The notes beneath the pieces are model-generated. The model was not told the origin of the DNA and did not search any database. It worked only from the letters and a program-made list of their open reading frames with translations. Below are positions 13,043-55,724 of a stretch of 64,000 nt of DNA, piece by piece; within the stretch, counting starts at the first letter, position 1, and each line of letters begins with the position of its first letter. This stretch comes from Marsupella aquatica. Its lineage: Eukaryota > Plantae > Marchantiophyta. The position numbers and the translations under genes were made by a program. Location: the NCBI GenBank assembly GCA_973895155.1, contig OZ316899.1:2255573-2319572 (forward strand), read 5' to 3'.

Positions 13043-13934
13043 TGTCACATCGTCAGCCTAGGTCTTAACCTGGGCTTTGGCTTAGACAGGCACATCCTTC
13101 GTCAATGAGGGTTCGGGCAGGAAGGGAGGCACAGAATGCACCTAACTCACATAAACTAGCGCTAAGTGCGCCTATTGTCATATACAGACACCTCTTAGGT
13201 ATGGTTTGTGTTCCACCGCCGGAACGTACCTCAGTCGATAGCAAGATCAACCCCGGCTTACGGGCTTCTAAGCCTTCATGTTGTCCGCCTTTGATCCGAA
13301 TTCGATGGTATGGGTACTCAACCCGGGCTCGCAACCACTTACCTGCAAGCTGCACCCCGTGCACGACTTGGGTAGTGCGTTCGGCCAAGCGTTGGCACCT
13401 ATACACGAGATTCACACATATACATACGCACAAGCATACAATCTCGATTTACACGAAGGAAATAATGGGAAAGGATTTTACTACATAGGAGACATGCGTA
13501 CACTTAGTTGACCCGAAAGCTCTGGAATGAACAGGTCCGAGGCCGAGGGTGTACACTACAACGGAGCCCGGCTCCGCACTTGCCCAGCGAGCTTGGTCCT
13601 ACACCCTCCCCTTGGTACTCTTTCACTCCTAGAGGTCGGGACTCCCCGCACACACCGCGGATGTCCAACACTGAAACTAAAAATCCCCCTTGCCTCTACC
13701 GAGGGGTGCACTAAATACTAAGGGCCGAGGAATGGAGTGCCCTCTCACCCAAAGATTTGCTAACTAAGGTCCTCACTAAGCTGGCTGTCAAGCCGGAAAT
13801 GGCTTGTCTTATTAGAAGATCCTAATCTACGCAAGTTGTACAGCATGGCAGTGCTGCTTTAACTAGGGCAGGTGCTTGTCCCTATAGCCTAATTTAGCTA
13901 CTCCTACTCTATTTTAATCCTACTCTGCCGCTAA

Positions 13935-16539
13935 TGCCTGGCACGCTTGCCAGAGCCGCCCAAGTGGGAGCGGCTATCCCGCCTCCTTCTGAGTCTGTCG
14001 GCATCCTGCTTGAGTAGCTGGACCTGGTCCAGCAGAGATTCGTTCTCCCGCTTTGCCGTGTCCACCTCTTCCGCGGCCTCCTAGCATGCCTCCTCCAGTT
14101 GCTGGGTGTCACTCGTCAGCTTATCCACCAACTAGGCCTGTTTCGTGGCTTCTCCTTGAAGCCGCGCCACCTCTGTCTTCAGGGTGTCAATCTAGGCTGT
14201 GTCCCACTGAGATCTAGAGTTAGCTTCCTCTAGATCCTTTTGCCAACTGACGGTTTTTCCCTTCAAACCGTCAATCTTGGCCCAGAGCCGTGCAATCTCG
14301 GCGTCCTTTCCGAGCCCGGCCTATTCTGCTAAAGCTGCTCGGGCCCTAGCATTGGCAACCTGGTCCTCCGTGGCCATTACCTGAGGCCGTAGTTGCTGGA
14401 GTCCAGCCTCCAGGGTTGCCACTTTGTTCTCCAGGTAGGCAGACTCAACCCGATATCGCTCTATTCTCTGCGCTATCTCTGCTTGCGCATGTCCTACCCT
14501 TACAGCCGCAACCAACTCCTGGTTGAAGAAGTAGGCCACCCTCCGGGCCATGTATTCCCCGGTGTCCCAAGAGATCTGTTGCAAGAAATCTCCCAACAAC
14601 CCATTCAGAAATGTGCCCGGCGCAAAGAGTTCCGGATGATCTAGACTGTGTCCATCTGGATTCGGGCACGGGCAGACTCCAACCTGAGCGGGAGTAGGAG
14701 AGGACACATCCAGCCCTTGAGGTAAGTCGGTTGAAGGGGCTGGTTCCACTGGAGGTGGGCAGTTCTCCCGCACCACCGCGGGGGGTGGCGGAATCCCCTC
14801 GGCTACCGTGGCATCTGCTTTGGGTATGGTTCCATCCGGCCCGGCTTCCATTGCATTGTCCCGATTGATCACGTTTAAGGTTGCGATAACGTCAATGGGT
14901 ATGCCTAGCGGGGCGGCAGCGGCGAGTTGCGGGCCCGGGGTAGCAGGACTTGCAGTTGCCGGACTTTGGGCCTCGGGCTGCGGTCGCCTCACCTGGGCTG
15001 GGAACACCCATTTTGGCAGGGTCAGCTCGGGCTCGTTGAGATGCGGGAGGCTCTGGCGGTCAAAACAAGCGTACCACTTGATGATGATTTTGATGTGGCT
15101 AGCGAAGTATGCCCTTCCGCCAAGGTACAAAGTCTTCCTTCTCCGCTCCATCTCCTCGTGGAACTTCTTGACGAAGAAGGACGCCCACTTCGTGGGCCAA
15201 TAGTTCTCTACTTGGATGACCTGAGCGGCCGATATTTCTCCTCTGGGTTCCATCATGTGGAGGGCATACCGCTGGAACTCCAGGCGTTTTGCTACCTCTG
15301 GGATGAGGCACGTCCTCATTAAGAACCCATTATCCACTACCCCCTTGGCCGAGAAACTAGAGGACTGGTATTTAGCTCCCTTGCCCCCAGGAGCCCGCGA
15401 CTCTACTCGGTTTATCCCCTCGGGTAAACCAAAAATCATCTTTAGACGTGCCTCTTGAGACACATCACTCTCCCGTGCGCTCGGGTTTGTTGACGGGCCT
15501 CGTCGAAGTTCTGAATGAACTCCAACATATCTTGTCCGTAGTACCTGCTTGAGTTCCAAGGGAGAGAGGCGAGGTGCTCAAACCCTTGGGTCTTCAGATA
15601 GCATGCATGCTTGGAGTGGAGGATGTTCTTGTGAACATTGTCCCCCATGCGATGCATGGTCAGCTTGGCTACCGCAACCGTGGCCAAAGGCAACCCGGAT
15701 ACGGCTGCGGGCTCCTTCCTCTTCCTACCCCGAGACTGATTCCCGGGGTGACTAGAAGAGGGGGACACCTCTCCTTCCTCTCGGTCAGGTGGTGGTAGCG
15801 CGACTGCCGTGAGTATTGGTGTCGGGGCCGCTAGAGTTACCGTGTTATCCCCTTGGGCTTGCTAGAGTGGTGTTAGGTTGTTCGGCGCTCGTTGAGTCGT
15901 ACCCCGCGGCCGTCGATTCAGAGGAGGGTGAGCCTCCTCGTCTTTGGAGCTAATATTTACCGCATTCACCATGGATCATACTCGGAGAGGTGGTGGAACC
16001 GGTGGTGGGGACCGGCTTGGCTGAGGCCGAGGAGGTGTAGGTGCGGGTATGGGCACGGGTTGGCCGGCACTGGTCGTTGATGGTAGAGTTGCCATGAAGT
16101 TCTGCAGGTGCCGATGGAGGTTTTCTGAAGCAAGTGAAGACGGCCTTGTCGATCGGGCAGTGTTGAACTCGCTATTGATGATAGTCCAGACTTGAGCGGG
16201 GATGTGGTCAAAGTGGTGCCGCTACAAGTCGATCGTGCTCGAGATATTGAAGACCTCGTCCGGAAGCCGAAGCAATGCCTCCTAGAAGCCGATGTATTTT
16301 CCTCCGTCGAAGAAGTACCCTAATACTTCTTTGGGTCGGTAAAGCTCGCTCTGGGACGGGTAATCAAAGTTAAGGAGATAGTGGTGTCATCCTGCTAGGC
16401 GGATGGCTCTCTTGTATTCGCGTTCGATCTCGTATCGGCACGGGTTGGAGTGTTTCAATGAGTCGGCCAAGTGCCCTCCGATAGACAGGAACTGAGTCCA
16501 GAATTGTATGGCCAAACTAGAAAGTATTGTGTGTGACAT
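13935..16539 (-). pseudogene. LTR-internal accessory gene of D (about 860 codons; several stops and a frameshift near 15460; 3' end approximate)
   Basis: ATG at 16539; core LKTQGFEHLASLPW...DMLEFIQNFD...RLKMIFGLPEG...NGFLMRTCLIPEV; coiled coil at 13.95-14.5 kb; basic tail RLRRRRDSRS. Confidence 0.75.
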
Positions 16540-16639
16540 TTAGAGGAGATAGCAGGTGACTAAGGAAAAAGCTAGAGAGTCGGGGTCGAAGCTGGCGCGT
16601 GGACTGAAGAACTGGTGCACTGCAAAGGATCGGCCCCCT

Positions 16640-17600: not shown

Positions 17601-17788
17601 TGTGATGCCGTGCCAGGATCACGAAGTACTTAGTTAAGCCTAAAATAATGGCTAAATAAAGATTAGGTAGATATAATTAGGGAGTTATAAAGATCGAAGC
17701 CGATTTCAATATGTTTGGGGGAAATTGTGATGGGATTTGATCCAACGGTCGTGATTAAGTGGGATTCGGGTTATGACCTAATCAGGGC

Positions 17789-18804
17789 TTGATCACGCAA
17801 GCCATAAGGAGGCGGCTTCGTAAGGAGGGGACCGACACTCTGTACACTAGTGCAATTGCTTGTTCGATCAACCTAGGGAATCAGCTGCCGATCGAACGGG
17901 GGAGGTGGTTTGAGAAATTGCGCAGGTTCTTGGCATTCGGTGGAATGAACATGGTGAATCAGGTAGGGAAGTTTTGGGGCTGTTTGCTTGAAGAAGCAAG
18001 GCAGCTGATACCTACATATGAAGACGTTAAGCCGGAGCGCGCAGCCAAAGAACGAGCAGAGCTTGCGTGATATGGGCAATTCACAAATCGGCATTCGTAG
18101 ATACGGAGGAGGTATTGGAAAAGTTCTTGTGGACACCCACCAGTGCGGAGCTTGACGAATTGCTAATTCGGGAGAATAAGGTCGTGGGGATCAGGGAGGC
18201 AATCAAGAACGTCGGGCAACCACTTTGGGAATTGAAGGGTCACACTGCAAAGTGGACAAAGGCAACTATTCTTGGGGAGTATTCAGGCACTGAAGAGATG
18301 AAGCGCAAGGGAGGTTCGGCATCTGCAACTCCAGCAAAGCGAACTAGGTTGGAGAGACCAATCAAGATGGAATCCGGGCCAATTAGAGATCGGGCTGTAG
18401 AAGATAAAAACATGACAGGGTGGGCGAACAGGTTACCTGCCAATTTACAATTATAGTTCGCAAGAGATGAGGATGAGGTCTTCAGTGCCGTTCAGGATAA
18501 CAAATATGCAGGATATATGAATGACACTGGGTTGGAGGGCTTTGTCAGGTTGCCCTGGAGAATGGTAGACATACCGGATGAGGATCTGTTGGACTTTGTG
18601 GGATGCTGGGAGGCTTCTTCCAACACAACGCTGCTGTATGGAAAGGTGTTCAAATTAACTCCTGCGCTTATCGAAGCCGTGTTCACTTTACCAACAGGAA
18701 GGAAAACAAAGGTGGAGCAGAGGAAGACGTTGCCAGACGACCAGTTCAGGTCATTTCCAGGGCCTTCCACTAAGAATGGGTTTTTTAGGAATCAGGAGTT
18801 ATGA
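17789..18804 (+). pseudogene. LTR-internal accessory gene of B, 5' LTR copy (stops, truncated by deletion)
   Basis: FWGCLLEEARQLIPTYED...MNDTGLEGFVRLPW...DLLDFVGCWE...FPGPSTKNGFFRN, homologous to the C ORF. Confidence 0.85.
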
Positions 18805-19634
18805 TATCAGTGTTATGATATCTGTTGCTTGATCGATTAAAGTCAGATAGGGTGAACTGTTGAGCAAAATACAATCGCATTGCCTTGATTGGAGACTGCC
18901 CAAATCAAACTCTGAGAGAATAGTGAGGATTGAGAGTGTTAGTCGGTGAAGTGTGGGTTGAGTCAGTCTGAAAAAGACCTTCAGCCGGCTTAAGAAATTA
19001 AGCCGTAGAGGTACATTCCGGGGGCGAAATACAAATATACCTGAAGAAGTTAAAGAGGAATTAGGTGTCTCAGTTGTGCACAATTCACAAGCCCAGTGAA
19101 AGAATCGGTCTGGTAAGTGTGGACCCAAGGAGAGTGTGACGGGTACCCCGTCACGGGAAGTCACACATAACTGGTTGCAAAGGCCGATACCTTGTTAATA
19201 GTCAATGTAAATAAGCCATTTTTTAATTTTTAGTTAATTCCGTCATTATAGGTTGATGATGCCCCAGGTGACTTTATATTCTTTCTCTCATAATAGTTCT
19301 AAGATTTGCGGCGACCTAAGTGGGCAAATATTTTGGGACCTTGAAACTAGCCAGGACCAGCCCCATAGGACTTACCGTTTTGCTTCAAGAGCTATTGTTG
19401 AGACCCCCATTGCAAAGTCAGGAGAGGGGGGGGTTTTTTTTTAAATAAATCCCTCCTCAGGAGGGCGAGTCCCATTAGTGGCCGTCCGAGAGAAAGAGGG
19501 GCTGCCTCGCGAGCCCATAGGGCTGCGTGCCCGGGCGATTAATGGGGCTCCGTGAGCTGAAGGGGCTGCCTCGCGAGCCCATAGGGCTGCGTGCCCGGGC
19601 AATTAATGAGGCTCCGCGAGCTGAAGGAGCGCAA

Positions 19635-19868
19635 GCGAGCGGGGGGGGGAGTTAAAGGGCCTCCCGCGAGCTGGGAGGATCACGCGAGCGGGGGGGAGTT
19701 AAAGGGCCTCCCACGAGCTGGGAGGATCACGCGAGCGGGGGGGAGTTAAAGGGCCTCCCGCGAGCTGGGAGGATCACGCGAGCGGGGGGGAGTTAAAGGG
19801 ACTCCCGCGAGCTGGGAGGATCACGCGAGCGGGGGGGAGTTGAAGGGCCTCCCGCGAGCCGGGAGGAA
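19635..19868 (+). repeat. 47-bp G-rich tandem repeat, 4 full copies plus 1 variant
   Basis: Unit GCGAGCGGGGGGGAGTTAAAGGGCCTCCCGCGAGCTGGGAGGATCAC; preceded by two copies of a unit of about 62 bp at 19500-19625. Confidence 0.95.
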
Positions 19869-20290
19869 TGGCCGCGCGCCCTGCATAGGGCCGCGCGCAG
19901 GAGGACGCAAGGGTAAGGCCCGAGAAATGGGCCGGGGCGCATGGCGAAGGCGCCAGGAGTTTTTTCGGTTCTATTTTTTTTTCCTTCCTTTTTCTTTCCC
20001 TCTTCCTTTTGCACGACCCTCTCATTGCCGAAAGCAAAAACGGGGTTCTTCTCTCTCTTGCCGGAAGCTCTCTCCAGATTCTAATTATTTTTGAAGCTCT
20101 CTCTTTCATGGTGGATTAGTGGGGCTTGCTGGCGTCATTCTTCCAGGCATTAGTGGCGGCCGCACGGAGTAGTGACGGGAAATTGAGAGAATTTAAGTGA
20201 TCGGGCTACGGGGGCTGTTTCGGGCCAGGGAATTGACATTGCCACGGGTGACGGGATTGGTGATTGAGAAATTGATTTCGGGATGCATGG

Positions 20291-22147
20291 ATGCTAGATC
20301 AACCAGAGTTTAGTGCGTCACGCATTCGGAGATACAAGGCTGCTTACCGTGACTACGTGGAGACTCGGATTACACGGGAAAGGGAAGAGAGAGAAGTTAT
20401 GATGAGCACGGGATTGGCAGCGGGTTCCTCACCGGTGGGTAGGAAGATTTTTCGTCGAATTTATCCCAAGACCTCCACCAAGGTGATGGAGGATTGTCGG
20501 AACATTTTCCAAGCCACCGGGCTTACAGAATTCATGAAGGTGGAGATTACCATCCCTTCAGGGAAGAGCTGGGACATTGAGGCCGGGATGGAGTTCCGAA
20601 CGGAGGGAATCTACTTTGAATGTCTCAAACGTGTAGTGCCCCATGTGGAGTTGGCTAAGCTATTGTTTCTTGAGAATCAGAAATTCTCATTCACACCTCG
20701 GAATATCAGGGGAGAACTCACGTTGAAAATGGTGGCCACTTGGGTGACCAATCCTACCTCCACCACCGCCATCCCTCTTTCTGCTGTCAAGGATGTTGAG
20801 TATAAGGGCTTCCTGGCCAAGGTGCATCAACGGGTTCTTGGCAACGTGCAATCCGGAGTGCTGAATGAGGAGCATTTCGTGGTAGCTATGGACATCAAGA
20901 ACTACCCAGCCCATGTGTACGGATGGTGGTGCTACGGATTGAAGAAGCTATTGGCCGCTGAGCCCGGGAGTGTGAAACCAGGTGGGGCTGTACATTTGAT
21001 GGGGTCATTTGTATTGGCCAGGGCAGAAGGGTTGATTGGTTCTCCGGGGCATGAAGACACGGGATCATCTCTCACCACGGAGATCCGGAGTATTGCCACT
21101 ACCGTTTTAGGGAAGCTCACGGAGGAATCATTGTCTGCTGGTGGGGAGGATAATAGAGAAGAAGAGAACCAGGAGGATGATTGCACATTGGAGTGGCTTG
21201 AATCACTCGTGGGAGATCCGAAACAGCCTCTGGAATACAACATTCCGGATGTTTACTTGGCAGAGCTACGGGATTTCAGAGAGGGAGTCCACGAGGGACT
21301 CAAGCTAGTCCACGCATTGAGGGAGTCTCTCAAGCACGCCACAGTCAAAGTAGAGACGTTAGAGCAGAGCATCCTGTCACTGAAGGAGGTGATCAAGACC
21401 AAGGAGCAGACCATTCATGAGAAGGTCAGGCACATCAATGCAGCTCACGTAGAGATCACCAACTTGAAGGGAGCTTTGTCCACCAAGGCCAAGGAAGCAG
21501 AAGAAGTAGGAGCGTTGAGGCAAGCATTGGCCAAAGAGAAGCAAAATTCTGGAGAAGTGATGGAGTGGAGGAACCAGGTGGGAGCACTACGGAGTCAGGT
21601 GGCAGCCTTTGAGACACGAGCGAAGAGAAGTGAGGCCCTGAGTCTAGGGAAACGGAAGAGTCCCGGCACACCTGGCTCCACACTTTCCCCGGATGTGATC
21701 TCCCAAGCTATCGAGATGGTGGTGAAGGAGGTTAGTGGGAAGTATGGACCCTTGTTGGATGGAGCCAAGAAGAGTCAGGAGAAGAGTAAGAGCTTGGAGA
21801 AGAAGCTCCGGGAGGTACGGAAATCGTTACGGGAGGCTCAGGTCAGTACGGGGATGCCACCCAGGTCTGTCACCCCCGGGACTCCCATGGCCACGGGGCA
21901 AGTTCTACCGTTGGAGTTGCGGTCCGGAGAAGAGGCTACCCTCTGGAAGGACACAATTGGTGAGGGGTACATCAAGGCGTGGCAGGCCTTGGCTGCTTTG
22001 AGGAAGCGCGGGAGCAGCAGCACTAAGAGTACTCCGTCGAAGAAGAAGAAAAGTACGGTGGCACTCACTCCCGTGAGTGATGAGGAGGAGGACCACTCAC
22101 GGGGCACAAGTCCGGGCACCGAGAGCGAAGAAGAAGAGGAGGATTAG
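20291..22147 (+). CDS. 618-aa accessory protein encoded inside A's 5' LTR (plant-transposon-protein-like N domain, coiled coil, basic/acidic tail)
   Basis: Intact ORF; FQATGLTEFMKV aligns weakly with the B/C/D core; heptad-rich region at about aa 325-520; SKKKK and poly-E tail; no obvious transmembrane segment. Confidence 0.8.
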   Translation: MLDQPEFSASRIRRYKAAYRDYVETRITREREEREVMMSTGLAAGSSPVGRKIFRRIYPKTSTKVMEDCRNIFQATGLTEFMKVEITIPSGKSWDIEAGMEFRTEGIYFECLKRVVPHVELAKLLFLENQKFSFTPRNIRGELTLKMVATWVTNPTSTTAIPLSAVKDVEYKGFLAKVHQRVLGNVQSGVLNEEHFVVAMDIKNYPAHVYGWWCYGLKKLLAAEPGSVKPGGAVHLMGSFVLARAEGLIGSPGHEDTGSSLTTEIRSIATTVLGKLTEESLSAGGEDNREEENQEDDCTLEWLESLVGDPKQPLEYNIPDVYLAELRDFREGVHEGLKLVHALRESLKHATVKVETLEQSILSLKEVIKTKEQTIHEKVRHINAAHVEITNLKGALSTKAKEAEEVGALRQALAKEKQNSGEVMEWRNQVGALRSQVAAFETRAKRSEALSLGKRKSPGTPGSTLSPDVISQAIEMVVKEVSGKYGPLLDGAKKSQEKSKSLEKKLREVRKSLREAQVSTGMPPRSVTPGTPMATGQVLPLELRSGEEATLWKDTIGEGYIKAWQALAALRKRGSSSTKSTPSKKKKSTVALTPVSDEEEDHSRGTSPGTESEEEEED

Positions 22148-23278
22148 ATAGGCGTACGGACGTGGGTGTACGGCCTCCAGATTTCCAACATTTTAGTGGG
22201 GGGTCACTCATGGGCTTGTTGGGATGAGCTCGCGGAGCTGATTCCAACAAGAGGCGGCGCTCCTCAAACGGAGCCAGGATGAGCAAGTTATGGCCTGGAG
22301 AACTTATGTTTTTGCGGTACGGAAACGGCCATAACTCAGGGGTCTGAAGTCCGTTGAGGGAGCGACTTAGTGATTCGGAAGCAGGAAAAGAAGAGCTATC
22401 CAGGGGTGAGCTCAGGTGTGCACTTGGAAGGGCACCTAGTTTCGGCCATTTTGGGGTGCCTCTCACTTTCAGGGTTCACGTGTACTGTTGGGGCGCCGTC
22501 GAAGGCACCGTCGGCCCCCTTGTTTTGGGTTTAGGGTTTTAGCAGCATGTGTGTGCCGCATGCTCCTCTTCAGTTTAAGGATTTCTCTTAGTGCAAGGTT
22601 TTAGCGGCGCCGCTAGGGTAGCCGCCACCGTTGTGACCCTGTGAGGGGTGCTTTGGTGTGATTTTTCAGTATTTAGGGGGATAGCCCCGAAGTAGTTAGG
22701 GGGACTCAGTGTGAAGTTAGCAAGGAGGGATAGAGTGGAGCCTGAGGAGTTTGAAAGCGTGTTCAGAGTAGTGAGGGGGAGCCATACTCATTGTCCGGAG
22801 AGGCAGGAGTTGAGTAGACGGCAGGAGGCCGGGTTACTCATGCAATGTGTATCGTTTTTCCCAAGAGATATGGATCTGTACATTTGACTTGATGGGCTTT
22901 TGTTGTGTGTTCCTTCTCCCTTTTTCGCTTTCCGAATTGTGTTCTCCCGTTCTATGATTTGAAGAAACTTGCTTGGTTTGAGTCGGCCTTGTGAGTAGGG
23001 GTGGTGACAGCACTCTTTGGGTGACTCCGAGTGAAGGTGTAGTGGGGTAGTCGGCAGGACTTGATCAAAAGCTGTGGGGTGAGGGTAGTCGGTAGACTTG
23101 ATCAAAACCTACATTTCCGGGAGCGGAAACCAAAATACTCATCCTGGTGTGAAAAGAATCCAAATAGCGTCCCTCCACGACCCCGTAATACGATACCAAC
23201 GGTTTAAGCGAAGAAAAGTGCGGTTTGCACGTATTAACCGTTGGAGAGGCAAGTGACATAAGTGTGGTCTTTTGTTTT

Positions 23279-23297
23279 TGGCGCCGCTGCCGGGGAA
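23279..23297 (+). other. PBS of A, tRNA-Asp-like
   Basis: TGGCGCCGCTGCCGGGGAA, 20 nt after the LTR end. Confidence 0.9.
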
Positions 23298-40800: not shown

Positions 40801-40954
40801 TTAAGCCTAAAATAATGGCTAAATAAAGATTAGGTAGATATAATTAGGGAGTTATAAAGATCGAAGCCGATTTCAATATGTTCGGGGAAATTGTGATGGG
40901 ATCTGATCCAATGGTTGCGATTAAGTGGGATTAGGGTTATGACCTAATCAGGGC

Positions 40955-41507: not shown

Positions 41508-41622
41508 TATGATGCCTAGCCAGGAATCACTCGGCCAGTTAAGTAGGGAAAGCAGGAGTGCACCCTAGAAACACCTTAGTATAGGGACAAAACAAGGAAA
41601 ATATAAACAATTAGGGGCGACT

Positions 41623-45002: not shown

Positions 45003-47542
45003 GACTCACAAACAACTGGACAGGACTCAAGTCGTTTATAGGACTGCGAGTTGTATGTTTTGTTACTAAAATAGACTTAGTTGTTTTCAAAACTGAGGGC
45101 TTAGTTGTATAAGAGACTTGATTTTCCAGTCGTTTGTAGTCTTTCATACGGGCTGGATGGGTGAGTCATTTTCAACGACTAAAACAATGTTTGTAGGGTA
45201 GTCATTTTAAGTACTGTTTGGGTTGACAAAATGACTAAGAGAAATATCAAGGTCCGGTTCATGTAAGTCATTCATTCTAACTAGGAATGACCTGATAAGT
45301 ATGCACCAATAACATTCATACACATTCATTCATACATAGGTTGAACTCTATTTCACATTCAACTTGAACTCTATTGCACAAAGTGTACCTCCATACAATG
45401 TACACACATTCTGCATCAAACAAAACAGATTCAAACACCAAACACCATATATACAAATGGATACACAATTTCCACACTTGCTGCATAGATACATACATAG
45501 ATCACAAATGGCAGGAACACAAATGACAAAGAATAATTCATCCTACTTACCAAGTAAAATTGGTACATGATGTTTGCCTTGGATCTTCCTCCAAGTCAAT
45601 GCTGCAATCTAACATAATTACTATCTAATATTCTATCTACATTCCCACTCACTATGGAAAACAAACCTACTCTGATGGTCAGAGCTCAAGAATTCTCATT
45701 GCATCTGCAATTACATCCTGAGGTGGATCATAGTCATCATCATACTACCTATCACCAGGCATCCCTCGTCAATTACTCTGGCTCCTTCTAGGGTATCGAT
45801 TATGTGATTTTTCTTTAGCTACTTACCAACCTGGCACTTGATGTGGGCCCTGTGCATCCTGTATAGATTCATTCTTCTGTGAGCCCCCTGTATCCATGTC
45901 TTCATCCACATCTAATCCGTCCTCTTCACCCCACTGTCCAAGCCCCAAGTTTGACTCCATGTCATCACCTTTTTCCCCATAGCTTTTGCACTACATCCAC
46001 AACCAAATAGGGACAATAAAACATAACCCAATTTCATGGATGCATTTGGCCTACAAACAATTCATGTATGCTTGACTTTCCATGGCATCCCTTCTGTGTG
46101 TCACTTTATTCCATCCTACTGGACGACAAACACATGTCATCTATGGTCACCCTGTAAGACAATGCAACCAAGTTGACCATCCATCCATCCATATATCTCT
46201 CTTGCTTGACAATTACTTTATCACGCAAATTTCCCCTAACTAATGTCCATGCAAACAATTTAGGTTATTCAGATCACAAGCACGCTGTCACTAGAAGAAA
46301 ACTACCTTCTACACTCTTTACAATATTTAGTCTCACGAAACAATTAGTTTCACTAACAATTAGTGTCACACACTAATTAGGGGTATCCCTTGATTTTCAG
46401 TCAACTGACCAGAGGTTCAGACTGTTGCATACAAACAAGAGAAACTTTGACTCCGCTGCCAAATTCATACCTTCATACGTCTACCATTAATAGAGACGAC
46501 AAGGACTTCAAAAGTGAGTGCATCAAAAAAGTAAGCACATTTAATGTATCTCACCGCATACAAAGGCATAAAACATGTATTTAATGTGAGCTATAGGCTG
46601 CAAGTAGATAATGGACTCTACATTTAAAAAATAAGAAGAGATGTAGCCTAGTCCTAATAGGCCCCACCAAATCACAGAATTAAAGGAGCATGGACCACAA
46701 AAAAGCACTAGCCTATTGAACTTCAAAAACTAGCTACAAGAATTACCGAACTCAGCACAATGTTGTACAGAAAGAGAAGTTACCCCACTATTGTGGCATG
46801 GTTTGTACTACAGATGGACAGGCAAATGGATCACTCAACGCAAAATCTGAAGAGAAGTATTATTCTATAAACAGAAAATTAAAAGTAAATACAAACTGAT
46901 TCCTAAGAGGTGAGAAGGCTATATACAATGAACACAAAGTCCTAATGAATACATAAGACAATAGCAAAATGAAAAGTAATGATGTTTTGGCTTATTTCTA
47001 GATCTGTCTGATATACAAGAGACCTTTTCAACCATGGGTAAGGAAAGTTCTTTACTATATTTTTCACCTTGTATGATATCTATAAAACGATGTCATTGCT
47101 TCATCACCCTTTTGACAAAGTCCATGGAGCTGCGTACTGTGGTGCAGGTGGCATCATTGTAAGCAAAGTTTTTTCAAACTAAGAGCTCAATAGATGGTGG
47201 CGGCTGATAGAGAATTCTACAGAAAGGGACATTCTTCTCAATGTCCCAATAGGCCCCACGGGCTCAAAGAATCAAAGCGGAGTGGACAAAATACCCTACT
47301 TGCACAATGAGATACAAAACGTAGCTACGACAACAACCACAAATAGCACAAAAGACATTCTACAGAAAGAGAAGATTCAAACTAAACTTGTGGCAGGAGC
47401 TGGACTATATAATCAGTGTACTATAGGCCAAATTAGGATAGGTCTTTATCAACTATTGAGCTGCATTCTTTCTGATTTCTTATTTTCAGCATATATGATT
47501 CTATACAATGCTTCCGCCCTTCCGACTGATTATTGTTAGGAT

Positions 47543-50171
47543 TGTGATGCCAATGACATGGTCCTTATTTTGTAATCTGATTAAGTAGGTTGCTGTATGC
47601 AAGGAGTAGCTATTGATATTGCATAACAATTAGCAAGATGGCAAGAATAGGGGCAATCAGGGCGTTAAGAGTAGGGAAATAAAAGCTATGTCGCGGGTGG
47701 TCGACGACCATATCTCTTTCAATATGTCACCAAATCCGGATCTATAAAGAGCATTGGAAAGATCTGGTCAAGGCGAGTAAAATCGATATAAAACCATCTC
47801 CTTGTACCTGAGGATCACGAAGGGATGTTGTGAATGCCGATAAACACCAGTTTATGCCCTTAACACCAGACTATCATAGCAAGACTCTATCACACATCAC
47901 CCAAGCTCAATCCCAAGGAACCAAGGTTGGGGATCAGATCTGCGCTCATGATAGTTCTGGTGAGAAGGGGTCTTCATATCGGGCCCGTACACACAGCACT
48001 ATGGTGCGCAATAGGTCTATACATATGCTTACTGTCATAGGTATGTTTCTATTCCGCCGCCGGAATGTACCCATAAACCAGTGACTCCTGACTGATTCCC
48101 GGCTTAGGGACTTCTAAGCCATTGCCCCACCACTCTGCCATTCCACTCTCAACAATCAGAGCTATGACAGTCCTCACCCAACCCGCTTCAATGCACCCGG
48201 TACACCTCTCAGTGGCGCTGCTAGTTCCATCATACACTCAGATTGCCTCACACACACACACGTCCATGAGAGAAATGAGGCCTGAGAGGAAAACTCAATT
48301 AGATTCAAAGATGTGCACAATAGTTCACTGAGAACACTTGATCCAAATACTAGGGCCGAAGGCTGTCTCCTCCAGATTGTGACGTGCTTGCCCTGCAAGC
48401 CCCGTGCTTGCCATGCAAGCTCAATCCTGAACCTGAGCCCGGCTCACTCCAGATTGCGACGGCAGATTGGACTCAAACCAATCCCGTACTTGCCTTGCAA
48501 ACTCAATCCTGAACTCAACCTCCTTCACTGCACTTCATTCTTGGGGGCACATACAGATCTCACACCTCCAATTCAGAACGTCAAGTTACGCATGCATAGT
48601 TGACTCGACTTCAAAGCTGGTACCAGGCCTAACGGCGATCTACCCCAGACTGCAATGAGGCCCGGCCTCATGCTTGCCCTGCAAGCTCAGCTCTGGCCAT
48701 AGATCCCTTAGTGCTCTCCACCAGACAAAGGCCGGGACTCCCCATGGATCACGTAGCCTTGCCAGACTGAACTGTAAATGCTCCTCCTGCTGCCCCTTAA
48801 TCAGTACCTCAGCCTCCCTAATGTGCCCACCGCAAATCGAATTGAAATCCTCCCCACAGTTTACAATCACCAATACATCACCTATCACCAAGGCTCTGTA
48901 TCGGGGGAAAAGAACCCAGTTGTGCTGCCCACTAGAAAGAGCCACAATCCAGCTCGCAAACCTAGCAACCCGTTGCTGTGAAGCTTGGCTGATTACTCCC
49001 TGAGTAATAGCACAACCAAGCTCTCCCCAACACGCAGCGTCCAAGTCCAGCCTTGCTTGCACAGAGCTCCTCCCCGCTGCTCAGTCTAAGTGAGATCACA
49101 CAACTGAAGTCCCCCCCCCCTTGCCTCTACCGGGGGCTGCTCTATATACTCTCATACTGAGCCCAAATGGGTGGATACTACGCTGCTGGAGCCCCATCCC
49201 AGCCCTAACAGAGCCGCCACTATCTCTAACTATTGAACCCTAACTCGCAACTTTATTTCTATCTCGAATTGGCTATGTACTTCGGATTCGGCCCTCCTCC
49301 ATGGTTTTCGCGAGCTTGCGCCTCCTCTCCCGATTTCTCTATTTAACCATTTTCTGCGTGGATGGCAGCGTTGGAAGCGGCTTGAGCTCCTCTTTCCAAC
49401 GAGGTCAATTATAGCCGATTTGGTCAAATACACAGAGAGTTATGCCCCCGCAACCGAGAGGGGGTACTCACTGCTGCGCTAACCCGAGTTACATAGCTAA
49501 CCCGAGTTTGGCTAACCTAGCTATCCTATCTAACCCGAGTAGAGCTAACCCGTGGTCTCGGGTTAGGCCGCTACCCGCTATCCGCTAACCTAGCCTAAGC
49601 TGAGCCCGAATCCGAGCTTACCTATGCTAACCTGAGGCCGCGCTGACCTGAGCTAAGCTGAAGCCGTGTTGACCTGAGCTAAGCTGAAGCCGTGCTGACC
49701 TGAGCTAAGCTGAAGACGTTCTTACCTGAGCTAAGCTGAAGCCGTGCTTACCTAAGCTAAGCTGAAGCCGTGCTGACCTGAGCTAAGCTGAAGCCGTGCT
49801 CACATAAGCTAAGCCGTGGTTAACCCGAAACTGAAGCCGAATCCGCTAATTCCAGCCACAAGTTAACCCGTCACACTAATCAGGCCGTATCTTTCTTAAT
49901 ACACCTCCGTTTCTCGAGTGTTTTATATCGATTTTACTCGCCTTGACCAGATCTTTCCAATGCTCTTTACAGATCCGGATTTGGTGACATATTGAAAGAG
50001 ATATGGTCGTCGACCACCCGCGACATAGCTTTTATTTCCCTACTCTTAACGCCCTGATTGCCCCTATTCTTGCCATCTTGCTAATTGTTATGCAATATCA
50101 ATAGCTACTCCTTGCATACAGCAACCTACTTAATCAGATTACAAAATAAGGACCATGTCATTGGCGTCACA
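47543..50171 (-). mobile_element. E: LTR-like element with 252-bp terminal inverted repeats and 5-bp TSD AGGAT
   Basis: 47543-47794 is the reverse complement of 49920-50171 (2 mismatches seen); TG...CA ends; AGGAT at 47538-47542 and 50172-50176; interior shares motifs with D. Confidence 0.92.
49642..49797 (+). repeat. 26-bp tandem repeat, 6 copies plus a partial
   Basis: Unit GCTGACCTGAGCTAAGCTGAAGCCGT. Confidence 0.92.
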
Positions 50172-52756
50172 AGGATCAATGAATTATTCAGTTGGTCCTG
50201 TCATAAAGACAAGAAGGATACTAGGATTTGAGTCTCCACAAGGGAGAAGAACTAAGCAACGTACGGAGGACAAATGCGGTCAATGTCAAAATTCACAAAG
50301 AAATATTCTTTAGAAATGATAAATAATGCAGCTCACTAGGACTATGAGCAAGACCTGAACCCCTTGCTTCTAGACAAGACTAAAGTCCACACAAAAGTGC
50401 TCCTATCGTAGATTAGATACGTGGAGCTGCTATTCAATATGCTTCAAGAAAGGAATAAGGTGCGAAGTCTACAACCGAAGGAGCTAATTTGAAACAAATT
50501 TGTTTTCATAAACTTCAATGAGAGGTTCATTTCTCATGATTCTGGAACTTGTTCAGACGAGCCGGAAGAAGAGAAATGTAGAGAATAGAAGAGACTGAAT
50601 GGTATTGGTAGCTCAAATACCAAGGAGGGAGTGAACTTGCAAGTAGACGTCATAGTAGCACCTCGCTCAAACTCAGACAAATTCATGCAGCCAAAACCTT
50701 GTAGTAGCGGTGACGTTGTGTGATTGCAGCTCCTGCTAAGTCGATCAGCTGTACACAGACGTTGATTGCAGCTTTGTTTGCTTAGCACCTCACTCGATCA
50801 GCAGCTCAGCTCATTCAGGTTCATCCTCCGTTCAATTGATGAGGACCCCCAGTCACTATGGCCTTCCAATCGGTTCACCAAGCCTTGGAGCTCACTTGAC
50901 CCTAACGTACATTGAGTCGATCTGCACCACCGCTCACTCATCTTGCATCTTCAGTCTACACGTTAGGACAGATCCACGTTGATCCTCACTACATTATGAG
51001 GTTCAAGCTCCCTTCTAGCTATATGAGCAGGTCCCGGTCACGTGACCCCACTCAAAGTCGTAGCTCTTGAGCTCAGCTCCCTTGGCCAGCTCAAATGAGG
51101 TCCGCGATCCCAACGGCATGCAGCTTCACAGCTTGATCAATAAGTATAAACTAAACTCAGCAGTTCAGTTCAGCTCGGTTACAAACTTGGGCTCCCTCTC
51201 AGTTCATGAATAGCATCAGCACAGCGCAGCCCACCGCTTGCAACTAAAACTATTGTCAGTGCAACTCAGTCAAAGCAGCTCAGCCGCCTTAGCTTCACAC
51301 CGTAGCAAAAAATGATGAGACCAATAGCAATCACCACAAGGCTTCAAAATGGCGAGAGTGTGTTGTTCTCTCCCCAAACACATGAGCATAGAAAGCCAAA
51401 TGATGCCGCAACACTATCAGTCTCATTGGATCGACTAGCCGCACACTCTCACTGGATTGATCATCATTAACAAACTCAATAGCATAAACTTATCCCTTGC
51501 TCTTCTAGGTAAGCTTGCTCCTCACTCACAATCCCTCGCTCTTCAGGCAAGTCACTCACATTACCCACAGTTGATGCACATTCCTACTTGGTGACAAAAT
51601 GCATGCTCGATCTCCATTTTTGTGAGGACGCTATGTGCAAATTGAGTAACGGCTCCACGCAAAAGGAATCCAAGGTGCACTGATGCATTAAACCCTAAAC
51701 CCTTGCTTAATTAAAGCCCAATTTGTTTATGACCGTCGGATCCTTCTTTGATTAAACTGTTGATTGTGAAAGTGTTGTAGATTCTCTGCTCATGCACAAG
51801 TGATTTGCCGCTTGATTGTGCAACAATACTGAACACATTGAGCACAAACACATATCTAGCATCCATGGAGGGAAACAAGTAGTCCTGGTACTTTTATTTA
51901 TTTTAACATTTTATTATTTATTATATATATGTCGGCTTAGTAAGACCATCATGGGGATGGTTAAAAAGGTTCATAATAATTAATATGTAAATACTTCCAG
52001 GCCTAAACGTCATATAATGTGAATCTTCTTGAAAATATAAAAGTCCCAAATAAACCTTAAATCCACAATAAAGTAACTAACCTCATTCAAGTAGACATTG
52101 AGTTCCTTATTAAAGGTGTAGAAATTAATTGTAACATACTTTGAAAACATACTTCTTTTATGACTTCCTCATGACTTACACACAAAAGTCACATAAGTGG
52201 CTTTCAAACTAGTCACTAACCGGCCTTCCCGTTTGCTAGACACTCTGGAACCCTAAAGTTGAGCCGGCCCTTGCGGGAGAACCATAAAACGTAGCGTCCA
52301 AACTATCATCTCCCAACACCAATGAAGTAAATGTGCTGGTTCCCGCTCGTTGCCTCGCGATTGTAAACCCTCTCCACAAAACCTCCACTAGACAGGAAGG
52401 AAAATCCATTGAGCATAATACTAGGACTTACTATTTGGCAAAGACCCATGCACTTTTAACATGGAGGACAACTACTATGACACTCCGCCAAATCACTCTA
52501 AACACAATAAAGAAGCCAATTAATTAGTTGTGCAACCCCCCCCATTATCATTATCAATAGCCAACAATAAAACCAATGACATACTAGAGTGTTCACCCTT
52601 CAAAAAGTACCAAGGTTACATGTCATAGTCTTTTCATAAATCATTAAACATTGAAAGTCTTTTCTAGTGTTCATGTGAACCGGTACAATGGTTCCTAGTC
52701 GTTTAGAGTATGTAAAAAGGACTTAGTGGGCTTAGTCCTATAAGGTTCAGTCTAAA

Positions 52757-53220
52757 TTGCCCCGCTTTCTACTAGTGGTACCAACCTCCGGCATGAACAC
52801 GGCAATAGATTTCGCTACCACCAAAGGTGGGGATGGCGCGACCCAAGCCGAACTACTCAGTAATGAGGCCGGTATCCCAGATCCACCTCTTGAGCAAGCC
52901 GGGGAGGCCGTGGCCGAGGCTGAGGCCGTAGCCGAGGCTGATGTTGAAGCCGATACCGTTGCCGGGGGTGGACCCAGTCAGGCCGATGGAGAGTTGACTC
53001 AGTCAAGGGCCGGTAATCTATCAAAGAACAAACCTACGGCAGTGGCTGAGGTGGAAGCGTTGGGGGCGTCCACTGAGGAACAGCCACCGCTGCCATGATG
53101 GTGGTGGAGGGCCGCTCCTTTCAAGGAGGGCGAACGTGGAGGGAGGAGGCATGAGTGGGCAGGGCGGGCTCAGATCTCTAAGTTTAGGATTAGGATCAGG
53201 ACCAGGAGGCGGCCCTGACA
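52757..53220 (+). pseudogene. Acidic-then-basic ORF tail in the right part of C
   Basis: EAVAEAEAVAEADVEAD...PPLP*WWWRAAPFKEGERGGRR...RIRIRTRRRP, paralleling B 54600-54899. Confidence 0.5.
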
Positions 53221-54006
53221 CTTAGCTTAGTGGGATTGCGGTTCCACTGGTAAGAGCAACACTTGTACTCCTGCCTCGCTGTACATAGGTAGATCCAGTT
53301 AGGTAGATTAGGCTTACGCTGCAAAGAATTAGGCGGATCCACTACCAGGATAAGTACCTGGGCAGCGGGGAGATCAGGGCCTCTTCTTTAGCAAGTTTTT
53401 AGTTTGCACCAGCCGGGCTGGGATCAAGTAGTAAGAGAAGCTCTCAGTTAGTCATACAGTGACCCTTGTGTATATTCATGTTTCCTCATGCCTAAGAGCT
53501 GAATAGAGTTGGCCTCACGGCTTAGTTCGCAGAGCTTGTGTATGAGATGTACTGTTTGTATGGCAAGTGCATGGTATGACTAAGTCAGAATGAGTCATTT
53601 TCCTATTTGTGTGTCGCATTAACTTGTGTGAAGAGTGCCCACATCAACCAATAGAGGAAGGAAAGTAAGCAGGGGAGTGAGAGTTGGATGTGTCGAGCTG
53701 AGAGAGGTCTTAGCGGCTTAACCAAGCCTATTGGGGATCATTCCGGCGGCGGAATCCAAACATACCTAACAAGACGGAGGGGAAGACAAGGGAAGGCCTA
53801 GATTAGGCCGGCTACGTATCTCATGACCCGATGAAGGATCTGTCCAGTATATGTGTGTGTTAATAGTAATAGTAGTAGTAGAAGGTTAGCAGCGTCCCAT
53901 GCCGCTAAGCCGCGGAAACGGCCTCGCCAAGCGCGAAACCTGCGGGAATCGGCTTGAGCTGGGGGGTTTCTTGGGTTTAGGGAGCCATGGGACGCACCAC
54001 AAAAGC

Positions 54007-54800
54007 GAACTAGGTTGGAGAGACCAATCAAGATGGAATCCGGGCCAATTAGAGATCGGGCTATAGAAGATAAAAACATGACAGGGTGGGCGAACAGGTT
54101 ACCTGCCGATTTACAATTACAGTTCGCAAGAGATGAGGATGAGGTCTTCAGTGCCGTTCAGGATAACAAATATGCAGGATATATGAATGACACTGGGTTG
54201 GAGGGCTTTGTCAGGTTGCCTTGGAGAATGGTAGACATACCGGATGAGGATCTGTTGGACTTCGTGGGATGCTGGGAGGCTTCTTCCAACATAACGCTGC
54301 TGTATGGAAAGGTGTTCAAATTAACTCCTGCGCTTATCGAAGCCGTGCAGTTGGTGGCAGACTTGGCAAAGACGTTCATGGGGCCAGACGATAATAAAGT
54401 TAAAACCGTTAAAGCCACTCCGGAGGAAGTCGAGAGCATGGCTGCTCACATTTGTGGTACTGTGGCCCTGAAGGCAGCGGTGGTAGAGGTAAGTACTGCG
54501 GATCAACTTGGAGCTGCGGTAACAGGTTTAGACGATGGTACTGCTTCTATGGACACACAGAACGTGAAACCGTGGGTTATCGAGACCGAGCGCATCGGGG
54601 AAAAGGCTTGGATTGAGGAAGTTAAGGCAAAGGCTCTCCAAGCCGTTTCCCAGGAGGATGCGGATGCAGATGCAGATGCAGATGCCGATGCCGAGACCGA
54701 TGCCGGGGCCGGCAAAACAGAAGCCGAAGGGGTCGGGCCGGGGCCGATGGCAGGAGAAGGTGCAGAGTCAGAAGATTCGGACTTACCCCCGATCATCTGA
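54007..54800 (+). pseudogene. B accessory ORF, 3' LTR copy, core plus acidic tail (in-frame deletion junction near 54346)
   Basis: Matches 18348-18681, then switches to QLVADLAK...DADADADADAETD. Confidence 0.8.
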
Positions 54801-55724
54801 CAATTAAGGAGGGCCAGTCATCGGTTGGAAGGAGGACGTGGCGGCAAGAGAAGGGCGCGGGCCAGAAGGGCGCGGGCCAGAAGGGCGCGACTGTTGTAGG
54901 ATGGGACAGGGCAAGTAGCGCCCTGTCGGCTTAGATAGTAGTAGATGCTCGGTTCACACAGGGTTCCGGGCTATTCAAGTTTTTAGGTGATAGTTTTTTT
55001 TAGGATTATCGCGGTGGAAGGCCATGTGTGGTGGTTAGGATCTGTGTTGTTGTTTTTTAAAGCGCTGCAAGGATAAAACCTGGGCAGCGTGGTTTCAGGG
55101 GCTTTTTCTTAGTCAAGGCTTTAGTACGTGTTAATCTGTATTGTTGTAAACACAGGAAGCTCTCGGCTAAATCTAGACCGCAGGGTATCAGTAAACCACC
55201 AGTTCCCTTGGATTTCTGAGCAATTGTTTGAATTGAGTTGGCTTCGTTGCATAGTTTGCAGATTCTTGCCATCCAAGAAGTTGAGTGTTATGATATCTGT
55301 TGCTTGATCGATTAAAGTCAGATAGGGTGAACTGTTGAGCAAAATACAATCGCATTGCCTTGATTGGAGACTGCCCAAATCAAACTCTGAGAGAACAGTG
55401 AGGATTGAGAGTGTTAGTCGGTGAAGTGTGGGTTGAGTCAGTCTGAAAAAGACCTTCAGCCGGCTTAAGAAATTAAGCCGTAGAGGTACATTCCGGGGGC
55501 GAAATACAAATATACCTGAAGAAGTTAAAGAGGAATTAGGTGTCTCAGTTGTGCACAATTCACAAGCCCAGTGAAAGAATCGGTCCGGTAAGTGTGGACC
55601 CAAGGAGAGTATCGCGTTTCCAAGCTGAATAGCTGCCGTAAGGAAAGAGGACCGACATAACCAAGTGGTTTATGATCGGTTGAGGATAGTTCTCGGTGTT
55701 AGAGGTCTTGGGAACCGTGCCACA

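What the first reader, a model, noticed from the sequence alone, without database searches (positions are those of the whole stretch)
13197..55517. Covarying stem-loop motif conserved near the 3' end of five LTR families
Seen (sense strand): B AGGTA-C-ATTCCG-GGGG-CGAAAT-ACAAATA-TACCT (19009-19042, 55484-55517); C GGGAT-C-ATTCCG-GCGG-CGGAAT-CCAAACA-TACCT (53733-53767); D AGGTA-C-GTTCCG-GCGG-TGGAAC-ACAAACCA-TACCT (13231-13197); E GGGTA-C-ATTCCG-GCGG-CGGAAT-AGAAACA-TACCT (about 48070-48039); A inner stem TTTCCG-GGAG-CGGAAA (23114-23129). The inner stem shows compensatory pairs (A-T, G-C, T-A) and a G-U pair. B, C, D and E also carry an upstream GGCTT(A)..(T)AAGCC hairpin with variable loops. The motif lies about 130-260 nt from the LTR end in otherwise poorly alignable DNA. 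Inference: a functional RNA element in R/U5 (packaging, strand transfer, priming or polyadenylation; a ribozyme is not excluded).
Basis: partly seen in the sequence, partly recalled or inferred. Interest (0 to 1): 0.8.

Follow-up and report, generated by a model that had tools for sequence, protein, structure and literature searches.

The report
Conserved hairpin in retrotransposon LTR ends
A 35-base block that folds into a small hairpin is the best-conserved piece of the 3' part of the long terminal repeats of several related Athila-like retrotransposons in this plant-like (probably liverwort) genome. Base changes keep the hairpin paired, so it is probably a cis-acting signal for the element's own replication, though its exact job is not shown.

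Summary
Seven copies of a ~35-nt block, (A/G)GGTAC-NTTCCG-GNRG-CGGAAN-ACAAAC-ATACCT, lie at the stated coordinates. A covariance model finds only these seven in the window (E 1e-12 to 4e-8; next hit E=3). The block is a conservation island: 0.70 pairwise column identity against 0.1-0.45 in the flanks.

The 6-bp inner stem is supported. With four more units from two outside contigs, 96% of cells pair. The closing pair takes all four Watson-Crick forms, and the loop-closing pair is G-C, A-U or G-U.

The outer GGTA/TACC stem and the upstream GGCTTA hairpin show no covariation. The "five families" are three lineages: B~C, D~E and A.

The hosts are Athila-like Ty3/gypsy elements. A tRNA-Asp primer site was found in A, F and G only. 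Relatives with the same primer site lack the motif.

Rfam gives nothing, so a ribozyme is unsupported. Whether the motif is transcribed (R/U5) could not be determined.

Best reading: a lineage-specific cis-acting hairpin with a G-rich tetraloop, most likely a Gag/nucleocapsid recognition or reverse-transcription element. Rivals are a DNA-level regulatory palindrome and a partial mimic of the tRNA-Asp 3' end that pairs with the primer site. The finding is of moderate interest: a new member of a known kind.

The parts
19009..19042 (+). Motif copy in family B, 5' LTR (inner hairpin 19015-19030, loop GGGG, C.A mismatch in stem)
   Evidence: 55.6 bits
55484..55517 (+). Motif copy in family B, 3' LTR, identical to the 5' copy
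53734..53767 (+). Motif copy in family C (inner hairpin 53740-53755, loop GCGG). It lies 234 nt before the end of the 12.5-kb insertion in B's 3' LTR.
13197..13231 (-). Motif copy in family D (inner hairpin 13225-13210; G-C closing pair, G.U loop-closing pair, one extra base in the tail)
48039..48072 (-). Motif copy in family E (inner hairpin 48066-48051). This is the only copy whose fold is significantly stable (z=-3.2).
23108..23140 (+). Divergent motif copy in family A, 5' LTR (inner hairpin 23114-23129 TTTCCG-GGAG-CGGAAA; no outer stem)
   Evidence: 39.3 bits
33993..34025 (+).
18987..19004 (+). Upstream inverted repeat GGCTTAA-GAAA-TTAAGCC in B. Equivalents: C 53715-53728 (+), D 13255-13274 (-), E 48101-48120 (-). 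The arms are invariant, so there is no covariation.
23279..23296 (+). Primer binding site of A, TGGCGCCGCTGCCGGGGA. It is complementary to the tRNA-Asp 3' end and is predicted to pair with A's motif in the leader fold.
   Evidence: tRNA-Asp assignment from the PBS given in the ATHILAfinder preprint
19135..23258 (+). 5' LTR of element A (4.1 kb); the 3' LTR is 29877-34143 (99.6% identical). A's intact 2132-aa gag-pol is 23514-29912.
54002..55725 (+). Distal part of B's 3' LTR. B's LTRs are 17601-19135 + 34144-34264 (5') and 40768-41507 + 54002-55725 (3'), each split by a nested insertion.
47542..50172 (-). Unit E: a 2631-bp LTR-like unit flanked by a 5-bp duplication (AGGAT), with 253-bp terminal inverted repeats (99%)

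Best explanation
The motif is a small cis-acting nucleic-acid hairpin. It has a 6-bp stem NUUCCG/CGGAAN, a G-rich tetraloop GNRG and a conserved 3' tail (A/C)CAAAC-AUACC. Selection keeps it in the 3' part of the LTR in one sublineage of Athila-like Ty3/gypsy retrotransposons from a bryophyte-like genome. A tRNA-Asp primer site is confirmed for A, F and G only.

Shown: its presence, its conservation above the flanks, and compensatory changes that keep the inner stem paired.

Inferred: it lies in R/U5 and so sits in the 5' leader of the genomic RNA, upstream of the primer site (139 nt upstream in A). There the exposed G-rich loop on a short stem would serve as a recognition site for the CCHC zinc knuckles of the element's own Gag. 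That would mark the RNA for packaging or dimerisation, or help start reverse transcription. This mirrors the GGAG/GGUG and GACG tetraloop hairpins of retroviral packaging signals.

The specific role (packaging versus priming or strand transfer) is a best guess.
For: Specificity and conservation:
- Seven specific copies in the window and nothing else.
- The conservation peak is 0.70 against 0.1-0.45 in the flanking LTR.
- C and E, from different lineages, share 93% identity over 30 nt while their flanks do not align.

Inner helix:
- 96% of cells pair across 9 units.
- The closing pair is AU3/GC2/UA2/CG1 and the loop-closing pair GC6/AU2/GU1.
- The covariation score is 0.384 against 0.18 in shuffles (0/500 reach it) and 0.13 or less for slid registers.
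- RNAalifold predicts the same helices independently.

Control: 20 distinct chance bacterial matches to the same pattern pair at the two free positions in only 4/20 and 10/20 cases, against 8/9 and 9/9 for the LTR units. Fisher p=0.0009 and 0.011.

Strand: sense-strand G.U pairs in D, L022u1 and L022u2 against one antisense-only G.U in B. The conserved tail is on one side only.

Position: upstream of the primer site in A and in its closest outside relative L022.

Loops are all G-rich: GCGG, GGGG, GGAG, GUGG, GCGA. A's Gag has three CCHC knuckles and B's has one; F, which lacks the motif, has three as well.

The hairpin is tandemly doubled in L018 and L022.

Indels in D and A break any reading frame, so the block is not coding.
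Against: - No transcript evidence. The transcription start and poly(A) site are unknown and no consensus signals were found, so the motif could lie in U3.
- The hairpin is thermodynamically ordinary; 4 of 5 window copies are no better than shuffles.
- Family B carries a stem mismatch in both LTRs.
- Relatives with the same primer site (F and G in the window, L001, Riccia L003, L023, L025) lack the motif, as do L004, L024 and L026, where no such site was found. It is therefore not essential to the clade.
- Only 9 units from about 5-7 independent lineages are available. Some outside units were picked by eye or by a scan that required pairing, which inflates the pairing figures.
- Nothing tests Gag binding.
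Confidence: 0.45

Rival explanations
1. The motif is a DNA-level regulatory element. It would be an inverted pair of TTCCG/CGGAA half-sites in the LTR promoter or enhancer (U3), bound by a host transcription factor. The 'hairpin' would then be a palindromic binding site.
For: LTR 3' ends of related B-like elements (L020, L027, L028, L029) are packed with CGGAA/TTCCG (12-18 per kb against 1.6 in the window), and L020, L028 and L029 also with CCGG (24-32 per kb against 4.1), apparently on both strands, like clustered factor sites. The unit is tandemly duplicated in L018 and L022, as enhancers often are. A U3 location cannot be excluded.
Against: Double substitutions change both arms together (TTCCG/CGGAA to TTCCA/TGGAA; flanking pair in all four Watson-Crick forms), which a fixed half-site preference does not predict. 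G.U pairs are tolerated on one strand. The loop and the conserved tail are asymmetric. The 8-nt TTC-to-GAA spacing does not fit a heat-shock element (2 nt). The window families carry one unit, not a cluster.
Confidence: 0.2
2. The motif is a partial copy of the tRNA-Asp 3' end, that is, the complement of the element's own primer binding site plus the preceding T-run. In the RNA it would alternate between the local hairpin and a long-range U5:PBS duplex that gates primer annealing. Alternatively it is a relic of self-priming.
For: Both covariance models weakly hit the reverse complement of the PBS in other loci. Local alignment of the motif to the PBS complement beats shuffles for A (p=0.0055) and marginally for C, E and L018u2 (p about 0.04). 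The minimum-energy and centroid folds of A's leader pair the motif with the PBS over 17 bp. In A and in L022 the motif is the best PBS partner within 420 nt upstream.
Against: Duplex energies are not better than shuffles (A z=-1.4, L022 z=-0.3). There is no similarity for B, L018u1, L022u1 or L022u2. The B and D leaders do not pair best with the motif. Stem covariation argues for the local hairpin. The PBS matches the ATHILA tRNA-Asp/Asn PBS and is identical across A, F and several outside loci, so self-priming is unnecessary. A GC-rich PBS finds partners easily.
Confidence: 0.12
3. The motif has no function of its own. The block would persist by shared descent plus exchange between LTR families. 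The apparent compensation would come from mutational correction of quasi-palindromes by template switching during reverse transcription or replication.
For: The families are related (B~C, D~E, shared TG(TG)ATGCC LTR starts). Related elements lack the motif without obvious harm. The sample is small.
Against: The flanks have diverged beyond alignment while the block stays 66-93% identical across lineages. The single-stranded loop and tail are conserved too, which palindrome correction does not explain. Recent exchange would give near-identical blocks, but A, L018 and L022 are clearly diverged versions.
Confidence: 0.12
4. The motif is a self-cleaving ribozyme, as in retrozyme LTRs.
For: None beyond its location in an LTR.
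Against: No hit to any Rfam family, including the self-cleaving classes it holds, at gathering score in the window or at E up to 10 in 400-nt stretches around C, D and A. The conserved structure is a single 6-bp hairpin without a catalytic core.
Confidence: 0.01

Closest known systems
Retroviral packaging-signal stem-loops with G-rich tetraloops (HIV-1 SL2 GGUG / SL3 GGAG; paired GACG-tetraloop hairpins SL-C/SL-D of gammaretroviruses). Recalled from established knowledge, not tested here.
   Same: A short stem capped by a 4-nt G-rich loop (A's loop is GGAG; others are GCGG, GGGG, GUGG). It lies near the primer binding site, occurs as a tandem pair in two loci, and the element encodes CCHC zinc-knuckle Gag.
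   Different: It sits inside the LTR upstream of the PBS rather than downstream in the leader. There is no sequence homology. Binding by Gag is untested, and close relatives lack the motif.
U5-IR / U5-leader stems and primer activation signals of retroviruses; Tf1/Sushi self-priming (discussed in PMC3601003; PMC6317226)
   Same: A U5-side sequence that can pair with the PBS region; 17 bp are predicted in A.
   Different: The complementarity is imperfect and not statistically secure. The PBS matches the ATHILA tRNA-Asp/Asn PBS, so a tRNA primer is expected. Stem covariation supports a local hairpin.
Palindromic cis-region of maize Sirevirus LTRs (PMC4728375, seen, abstract only)
   Same: Conserved palindromic or inverted-repeat motifs in plant LTRs.
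   Different: Those are in Ty1/copia Sireviruses. They lie in the LTR cis-regulatory region and are discussed there in relation to siRNA targeting. No sequence relation was tested.
Athila / OTA non-chromovirus Ty3/gypsy lineage (host elements)
   Same: A tRNA-Asp PBS preceded by a short AT-rich spacer, very long LTRs, extra ORFs and tandem-repeat arrays, and gag-PR-RT-RH-INT order.
   Different: The closest named proteins are from the liverwort Riccia at only 55-58% identity. The ORFs lie inside the LTRs. Clade assignment by phylogeny was not done.

Membership tests
Self-cleaving ribozymes (hammerhead as in retrozymes, and the other Rfam classes) | Match to the family covariance model (conserved catalytic core and helices) | tested here: not met
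   No Rfam hit at gathering score in 64 kb. No relevant hit at E<=10 around the motif in C, D and A.
Histone 3' stem-loop (6-bp stem, 4-nt loop) | Match to Rfam RF00032; GG base pairs and a U-rich loop | tested here: not met
   No Rfam hit. The loop is G-rich and the stem is NUUCCG.
Retroelement packaging / NC-binding stem-loop | Short conserved stem with exposed G-rich loop, maintained by compensatory change | tested here: met
   inner helix 96% paired, two covarying pairs, loops GNRG.
Retroelement packaging / NC-binding stem-loop | Element encodes a zinc-knuckle nucleocapsid | tested here: met
   CCHC motifs in A Gag (aa 428, 533, 561) and B Gag (aa 421), and in F, which lacks the motif.
Retroelement packaging / NC-binding stem-loop | Lies in the 5' untranslated part of the genomic RNA | not testable with these tools
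   No transcript data, and no TATA or AATAAA signals to place the start or poly(A) site.
Retroelement packaging / NC-binding stem-loop | Specific binding by Gag/NC and requirement for encapsidation | not testable with these tools
   Needs binding and packaging assays.
Tf1/Sushi-type self-primer | Perfect complementarity (about 11 nt) between the transcript 5' end and the PBS, in place of a tRNA-matched PBS | tested here: not met
   The PBS is an 18-nt match to the ATHILA tRNA-Asp/Asn PBS apart from one position. Motif:PBS pairing is interrupted (7+5+5 bp) and not above shuffles.
Heat-shock element (as in ONSEN LTRs) | nTTCnnGAAn units with 2-nt spacing | tested here: not met
   TTC and GAA are 8 nt apart in the motif.
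tRNA-derived LTR segments (Helenus-type TRIMs, PMC10886601) | A whole tRNA-like sequence in the LTR | tested here: not met
   ARAGORN finds no tRNA-like gene in the window. Only about 19 nt resemble the tRNA-Asp 3' end.
Athila-like OTA Ty3/gypsy (host elements) | PBS complementary to tRNA-Asp, long LTRs, gag-PR-RT-RH-INT order | tested here: met
   for A, F and G. B and D have degenerate primer sites.

The most novel reading that the evidence does not exclude
The hairpin is a partial mimic of the 3' end of tRNA-Asp embedded in U5. It would switch between a local stem-loop and a long-range duplex with the element's own primer binding site. That would gate primer annealing, shield the site from tRNA-fragment silencing, or mark a transitional form between self-priming and tRNA priming in plant Ty3/gypsy elements.
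Probability: 0.1. Interest if true: 0.65.

Novelty: new member of a known kind. Interest (0 to 1): 0.4.

Why it matters
Cis-acting RNA signals of plant LTR retrotransposons (packaging, dimerisation, primer placement) are poorly known compared with those of retroviruses and yeast Ty elements, although these elements make up most of many plant genomes.

A short, recognisable, covarying hairpin shared by several active-looking families gives a concrete handle for experiments. Element A has 99.6% identical LTRs and an intact 2132-aa gag-pol. Such experiments could test how Gag chooses its RNA in an early-diverging land-plant lineage.

The motif is also a practical marker for annotating LTR 3' ends and their orientation in such genomes. 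Its patchy distribution among elements with the same primer site shows how quickly such signals turn over.

Tried and rejected
1. Rfam. Nothing at gathering score over the whole window, and nothing relevant in permissive mode around three copies.

2. Collection scans with a 19-20-base motif pattern.
- Metagenomes: 15 loci, all chance or bacterial coding matches except L018.
- Viral contigs: none.
- Prokaryote genomes: 15 chance matches, reused as a null control.

3. Protein-led retrieval of related elements.
- Only L022 has clear homologous units.
- L001, L003 (Riccia), L004 and L023-L026 lack the motif.
- L020 and L029 (TCCGGAGGAATAC) and L028 (TTTCCGG-16 nt-CCGGAAA) carry doubtful variants. 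I left these out of the covariation count.

4. The search for related loci on viral contigs with A's RT found no relatives. The B gag homology search found a single protein.

5. Complement-of-PBS idea. The similarity is significant only for A and duplex energies are not above shuffles, so it is kept as a minority reading.

6. Coding explanation rejected: there are frame-breaking indels between families.

7. TATA, AATAAA and CCAAT scans to place U3/R/U5 gave nothing usable.

8. The tail CAAAYATACC is not otherwise enriched in the window.

9. The outer GGTA/TACC helix is only 60% paired across the 9 units and has no clean covariation.

10. Literature searches found no description of this motif.


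Full report
**What is there**

The window is a nest of Ty3/gypsy LTR retrotransposons (self-comparison; tblastn with A's polyprotein; Pfam).

- Element A has 4.1-kb LTRs (19135-23258 and 29877-34143, 99.6% identical) and an intact 2132-aa gag-PR-RT-RH-INT ORF (23514-29912). It is inserted in the 5' LTR of element B.
- B's LTRs are 17601-19135 + 34144-34264 and 40768-41507 + 54002-55725.
- The 12.5-kb stretch 41508-54001 is an insertion in B's 3' LTR. It ends with the C motif and contains unit E.
- D lies on the minus strand. It is cut at 12712 by the 5' LTR of element G, whose PBS is at 9316 (-) and whose pol is at 2980-366.
- F (PBS 58885, gag-pol from 60097) lies at the right end.

A, F and G have the primer binding site TGGCGCCGCTGCCGGGGA (one mismatch in G) preceded by TTTT. 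That is the ATHILA-type tRNA-Asp/Asn site. Together with the very long LTRs, extra ORFs and tandem arrays, this fits the non-chromovirus OTA/Athila group.

The nearest named proteins are from the liverwort Riccia sorocarpa at 55-58% identity, so the source is probably a bryophyte. The window's own genome is not in the protein collection.

**Check of the observation**

All reported sites exist, and A has a second copy in its 3' LTR.

The alignment shows a block of about 35 nt: (A/G)GGTAC-N-TTCCG-GNRG-CGGAA-N-(A/C)CAAAC(C)-ATACCT.

- A covariance model of the five units finds only the seven copies in 64 kb, at E 1e-12 to 4e-8; the next hit is E=3.
- In a 560-nt alignment of the LTR 3' parts, the block is the conservation peak: 0.70 pairwise column identity against 0.1-0.45 elsewhere.
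- That alignment also shows that B resembles C and D resembles E well beyond the motif. The five "families" are therefore three deeper lineages.
- From motif end to LTR end is 118 nt in A, 208-214 in B and 234 in C. It is about 154 in D and 151 in E, where the ends are inferred from terminus similarity.
- E is unusual. It is a 2631-bp unit (47542-50172) with a 5-bp target duplication, AGGAT, and its last 253 bp are an inverted copy of its first 253 bp.

**Is the stem real?**

Single-sequence folding is unimpressive. Only E is more stable than shuffles (z=-3.2), and B does not form the hairpin because of a C.A mismatch. The evidence is comparative.

I obtained relatives in two ways.
- Protein-led retrieval used all 12 look-ups. 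The closest relative of A, L022, carries two tandem units 178-238 nt upstream of its tRNA-Asp PBS.
- A motif-pattern scan of metagenomes left the closing pair and one loop-closing base free. It gave one plant-like contig, L018, also with two tandem units.

On the 9-unit alignment A4, the inner helix pairs in 96% of cells.
- The closing pair is A-U (3), G-C (2), U-A (2) and C-G (1), with one mismatch.
- The loop-closing pair is G-C (6), A-U (2) and G-U (1).
- The covariation score is 0.384, against 0.18 in shuffles (0/500 reach it) and 0.13 or less in slid registers.
- Several changes are between close relatives (D against E) or between neighbouring tandem units, so they are separate events.

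As a control, 20 distinct chance bacterial matches to the same pattern pair at those two positions in only 4/20 and 10/20 cases. The LTR units pair in 8/9 and 9/9 (Fisher p=0.0009 and 0.011). RNAalifold on B-E predicts the same structure.

Two caveats apply. The sample is small, and L018u1 and the L022 units were recognised by eye or by a scan that demanded pairing.

The outer GGTA/TACC helix pairs in only 60% of cells; it is absent in A and weak in C. The upstream GGCTTA..TAAGCC repeat is present in B-E but has invariant arms. Neither is demonstrated as structure.

**Strand and level**

Three G.U pairs occur on the sense strand (D, L022u1, L022u2) against one that would be G.U only on the antisense strand (B). 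The loop (GNRG) and the conserved tail are one-sided. Indels between families rule out coding. This favours a sense-strand single-stranded form, either RNA or its strong-stop DNA complement, but only mildly.

No TATA, AATAAA or CCAAT pattern places the transcription start or poly(A) site. R/U5 placement therefore remains an assumption based on the short distance to the LTR end.

**Distribution**

The motif is not general to the clade. F and G in the window, and L001, L003 (Riccia), L023 and L025, have the same tRNA-Asp PBS but no motif. L004, L024 and L026 also lack the motif, and no such PBS was found in them.

B-like elements from ENA assemblies (L020, L027, L028, L029) instead have LTR ends packed with CGGAA (12-18 per kb against 1.6 in the window); L020, L028 and L029 are also rich in CCGG (24-32 per kb against 4.1). 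They also carry doubtful short or long-loop variants. This keeps a DNA-level factor-site reading alive. However, the coordinated two-arm substitutions and the asymmetry argue against it.

**An unexpected lead**

Both covariance models weakly matched the reverse complement of the tRNA-Asp PBS in other loci.
- A's motif resembles the complement of its own TTTT+PBS (p=0.0055 against shuffles). C, E and L018u2 do so marginally (p about 0.04), and B, L018u1 and L022u1/u2 not at all.
- The minimum-energy and centroid folds of A's leader pair the motif with the PBS over 17 bp.
- In A and L022 the motif is the best PBS partner within 420 nt. The duplex energies are not better than shuffles, though (z=-1.4 and -0.3).
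- The B and D leaders do not prefer the motif.

I keep this as a minority reading: a hairpin/PBS-duplex switch, or a tRNA 3'-end mimic.

**Mechanism proposed**

Shown: a conserved, covarying 6-bp hairpin with a G-rich tetraloop and a conserved 3' tail, near the LTR 3' end of one Athila-like sublineage.

Inferred: it is part of the genomic RNA leader and is read by the element's own Gag. A's Gag has three CCHC knuckles and B's has one. The role would be RNA selection or dimerisation, or assistance in early reverse transcription. This parallels retroviral GGAG/GGUG/GACG tetraloop hairpins, which I cite from established knowledge. Tandem doubling in L018 and L022 fits that analogy.

My confidence that this is a selected structure is about 0.7. 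That it acts in the RNA leader, about 0.5. That it is a Gag/NC recognition site specifically, about 0.25-0.3.

**Comparison and novelty**

There is no Rfam family, no ribozyme core, no histone-type stem-loop and no tRNA-like gene. Literature searches found general work on LTR structure and ATHILA signatures but nothing describing this motif.

It is best filed as a new, lineage-restricted example of a known kind, the structured cis elements of LTR retroelements. It is of moderate interest until transcript mapping and binding tests are done.

No step needed referral.

Noticed in passing
window 20291-22147 and 31176-33032 (+): Each 4.1-kb LTR of element A carries an identical-length intact 618-aa ORF with no Pfam match. 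A 47-bp tandem array lies upstream of it (19589-19982; 30333-30867, with more copies in the 3' LTR). In the genomic RNA the 3' copy would act as a post-pol ORF lying in U3.
   Followed up: partly
window 47542-50172: Unit E is a 2631-bp LTR-like unit with a 5-bp target duplication (AGGAT). Its last 253 bp are a 99%-identical inverted copy of its first 253 bp, so both termini read TGTGATGCC... inwards. This looks like integration of an aberrant (snap-back?) reverse-transcription product rather than a plain solo LTR.
   Followed up: partly
window 41508-54001: A 12.5-kb insertion in B's 3' LTR is bounded by a 5-bp overlap of B sequence, consistent with a target-site duplication. It has no gag-pol homology and no matching LTR pair. 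Its first 2.7 kb is homologous to G's 5' LTR (12712-9940, minus), but its end, which carries the motif, is not. It is either a composite or a large non-autonomous element. It includes a 324-aa coiled-coil ORF (44028-45002) with a borderline ATG16 Pfam hit, and a 26-bp tandem array at 49582-49840.
   Followed up: partly
L001 2133-2378 and 11623-11868; L018 1142-1384 (-): An 81-aa Elf1-type zinc-ribbon ORF (transcription elongation factor family) lies inside related retrotransposons: between the PBS and gag in L001, and 73% identical in L018. This appears to be a captured host gene carried by an Athila-like lineage. L001 is also a tandem LTR-internal-LTR-internal array.
   Followed up: no
window 18681-18809 versus 54347-55284: B's two LTRs are 97-99% identical but differ by about 810 bp at this point: 128 bp in the 5' LTR against 937 bp in the 3' LTR. 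This is an unexamined insertion or deletion.
   Followed up: no
window 34264-34300; 13043-12995 (-): B and D lack a recognisable tRNA-Asp primer site after their LTR ends. B has TTTT-TGGCGCTAGATGG, where only the first 6 nt match; D has none. B's gag-pol is split by stops into several ORFs despite its young LTRs.
   Followed up: partly
window 23070-23105; L022 about 575-590: Perfect palindromes lie just upstream of the motif: TTGATCAA twice, within a 27-nt direct repeat, in A, and GCTCTAGAGC in L022. The GGCTTA..TAAGCC repeats of B-E occupy the same position. Position and form recall retroviral dimerisation sites, but this was not tested statistically.
   Followed up: no
window 5843-6479 (-) versus 56596-57251 (+); 6838-8475 (+) versus 15684-13640 (-): Between G's PBS (9316) and its gag there are two pieces of other LTRs: an 85%-identical piece of F's LTR and a truncated D-like LTR in the opposite orientation. 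This indicates further nested or rearranged insertions in G's leader.
   Followed up: no
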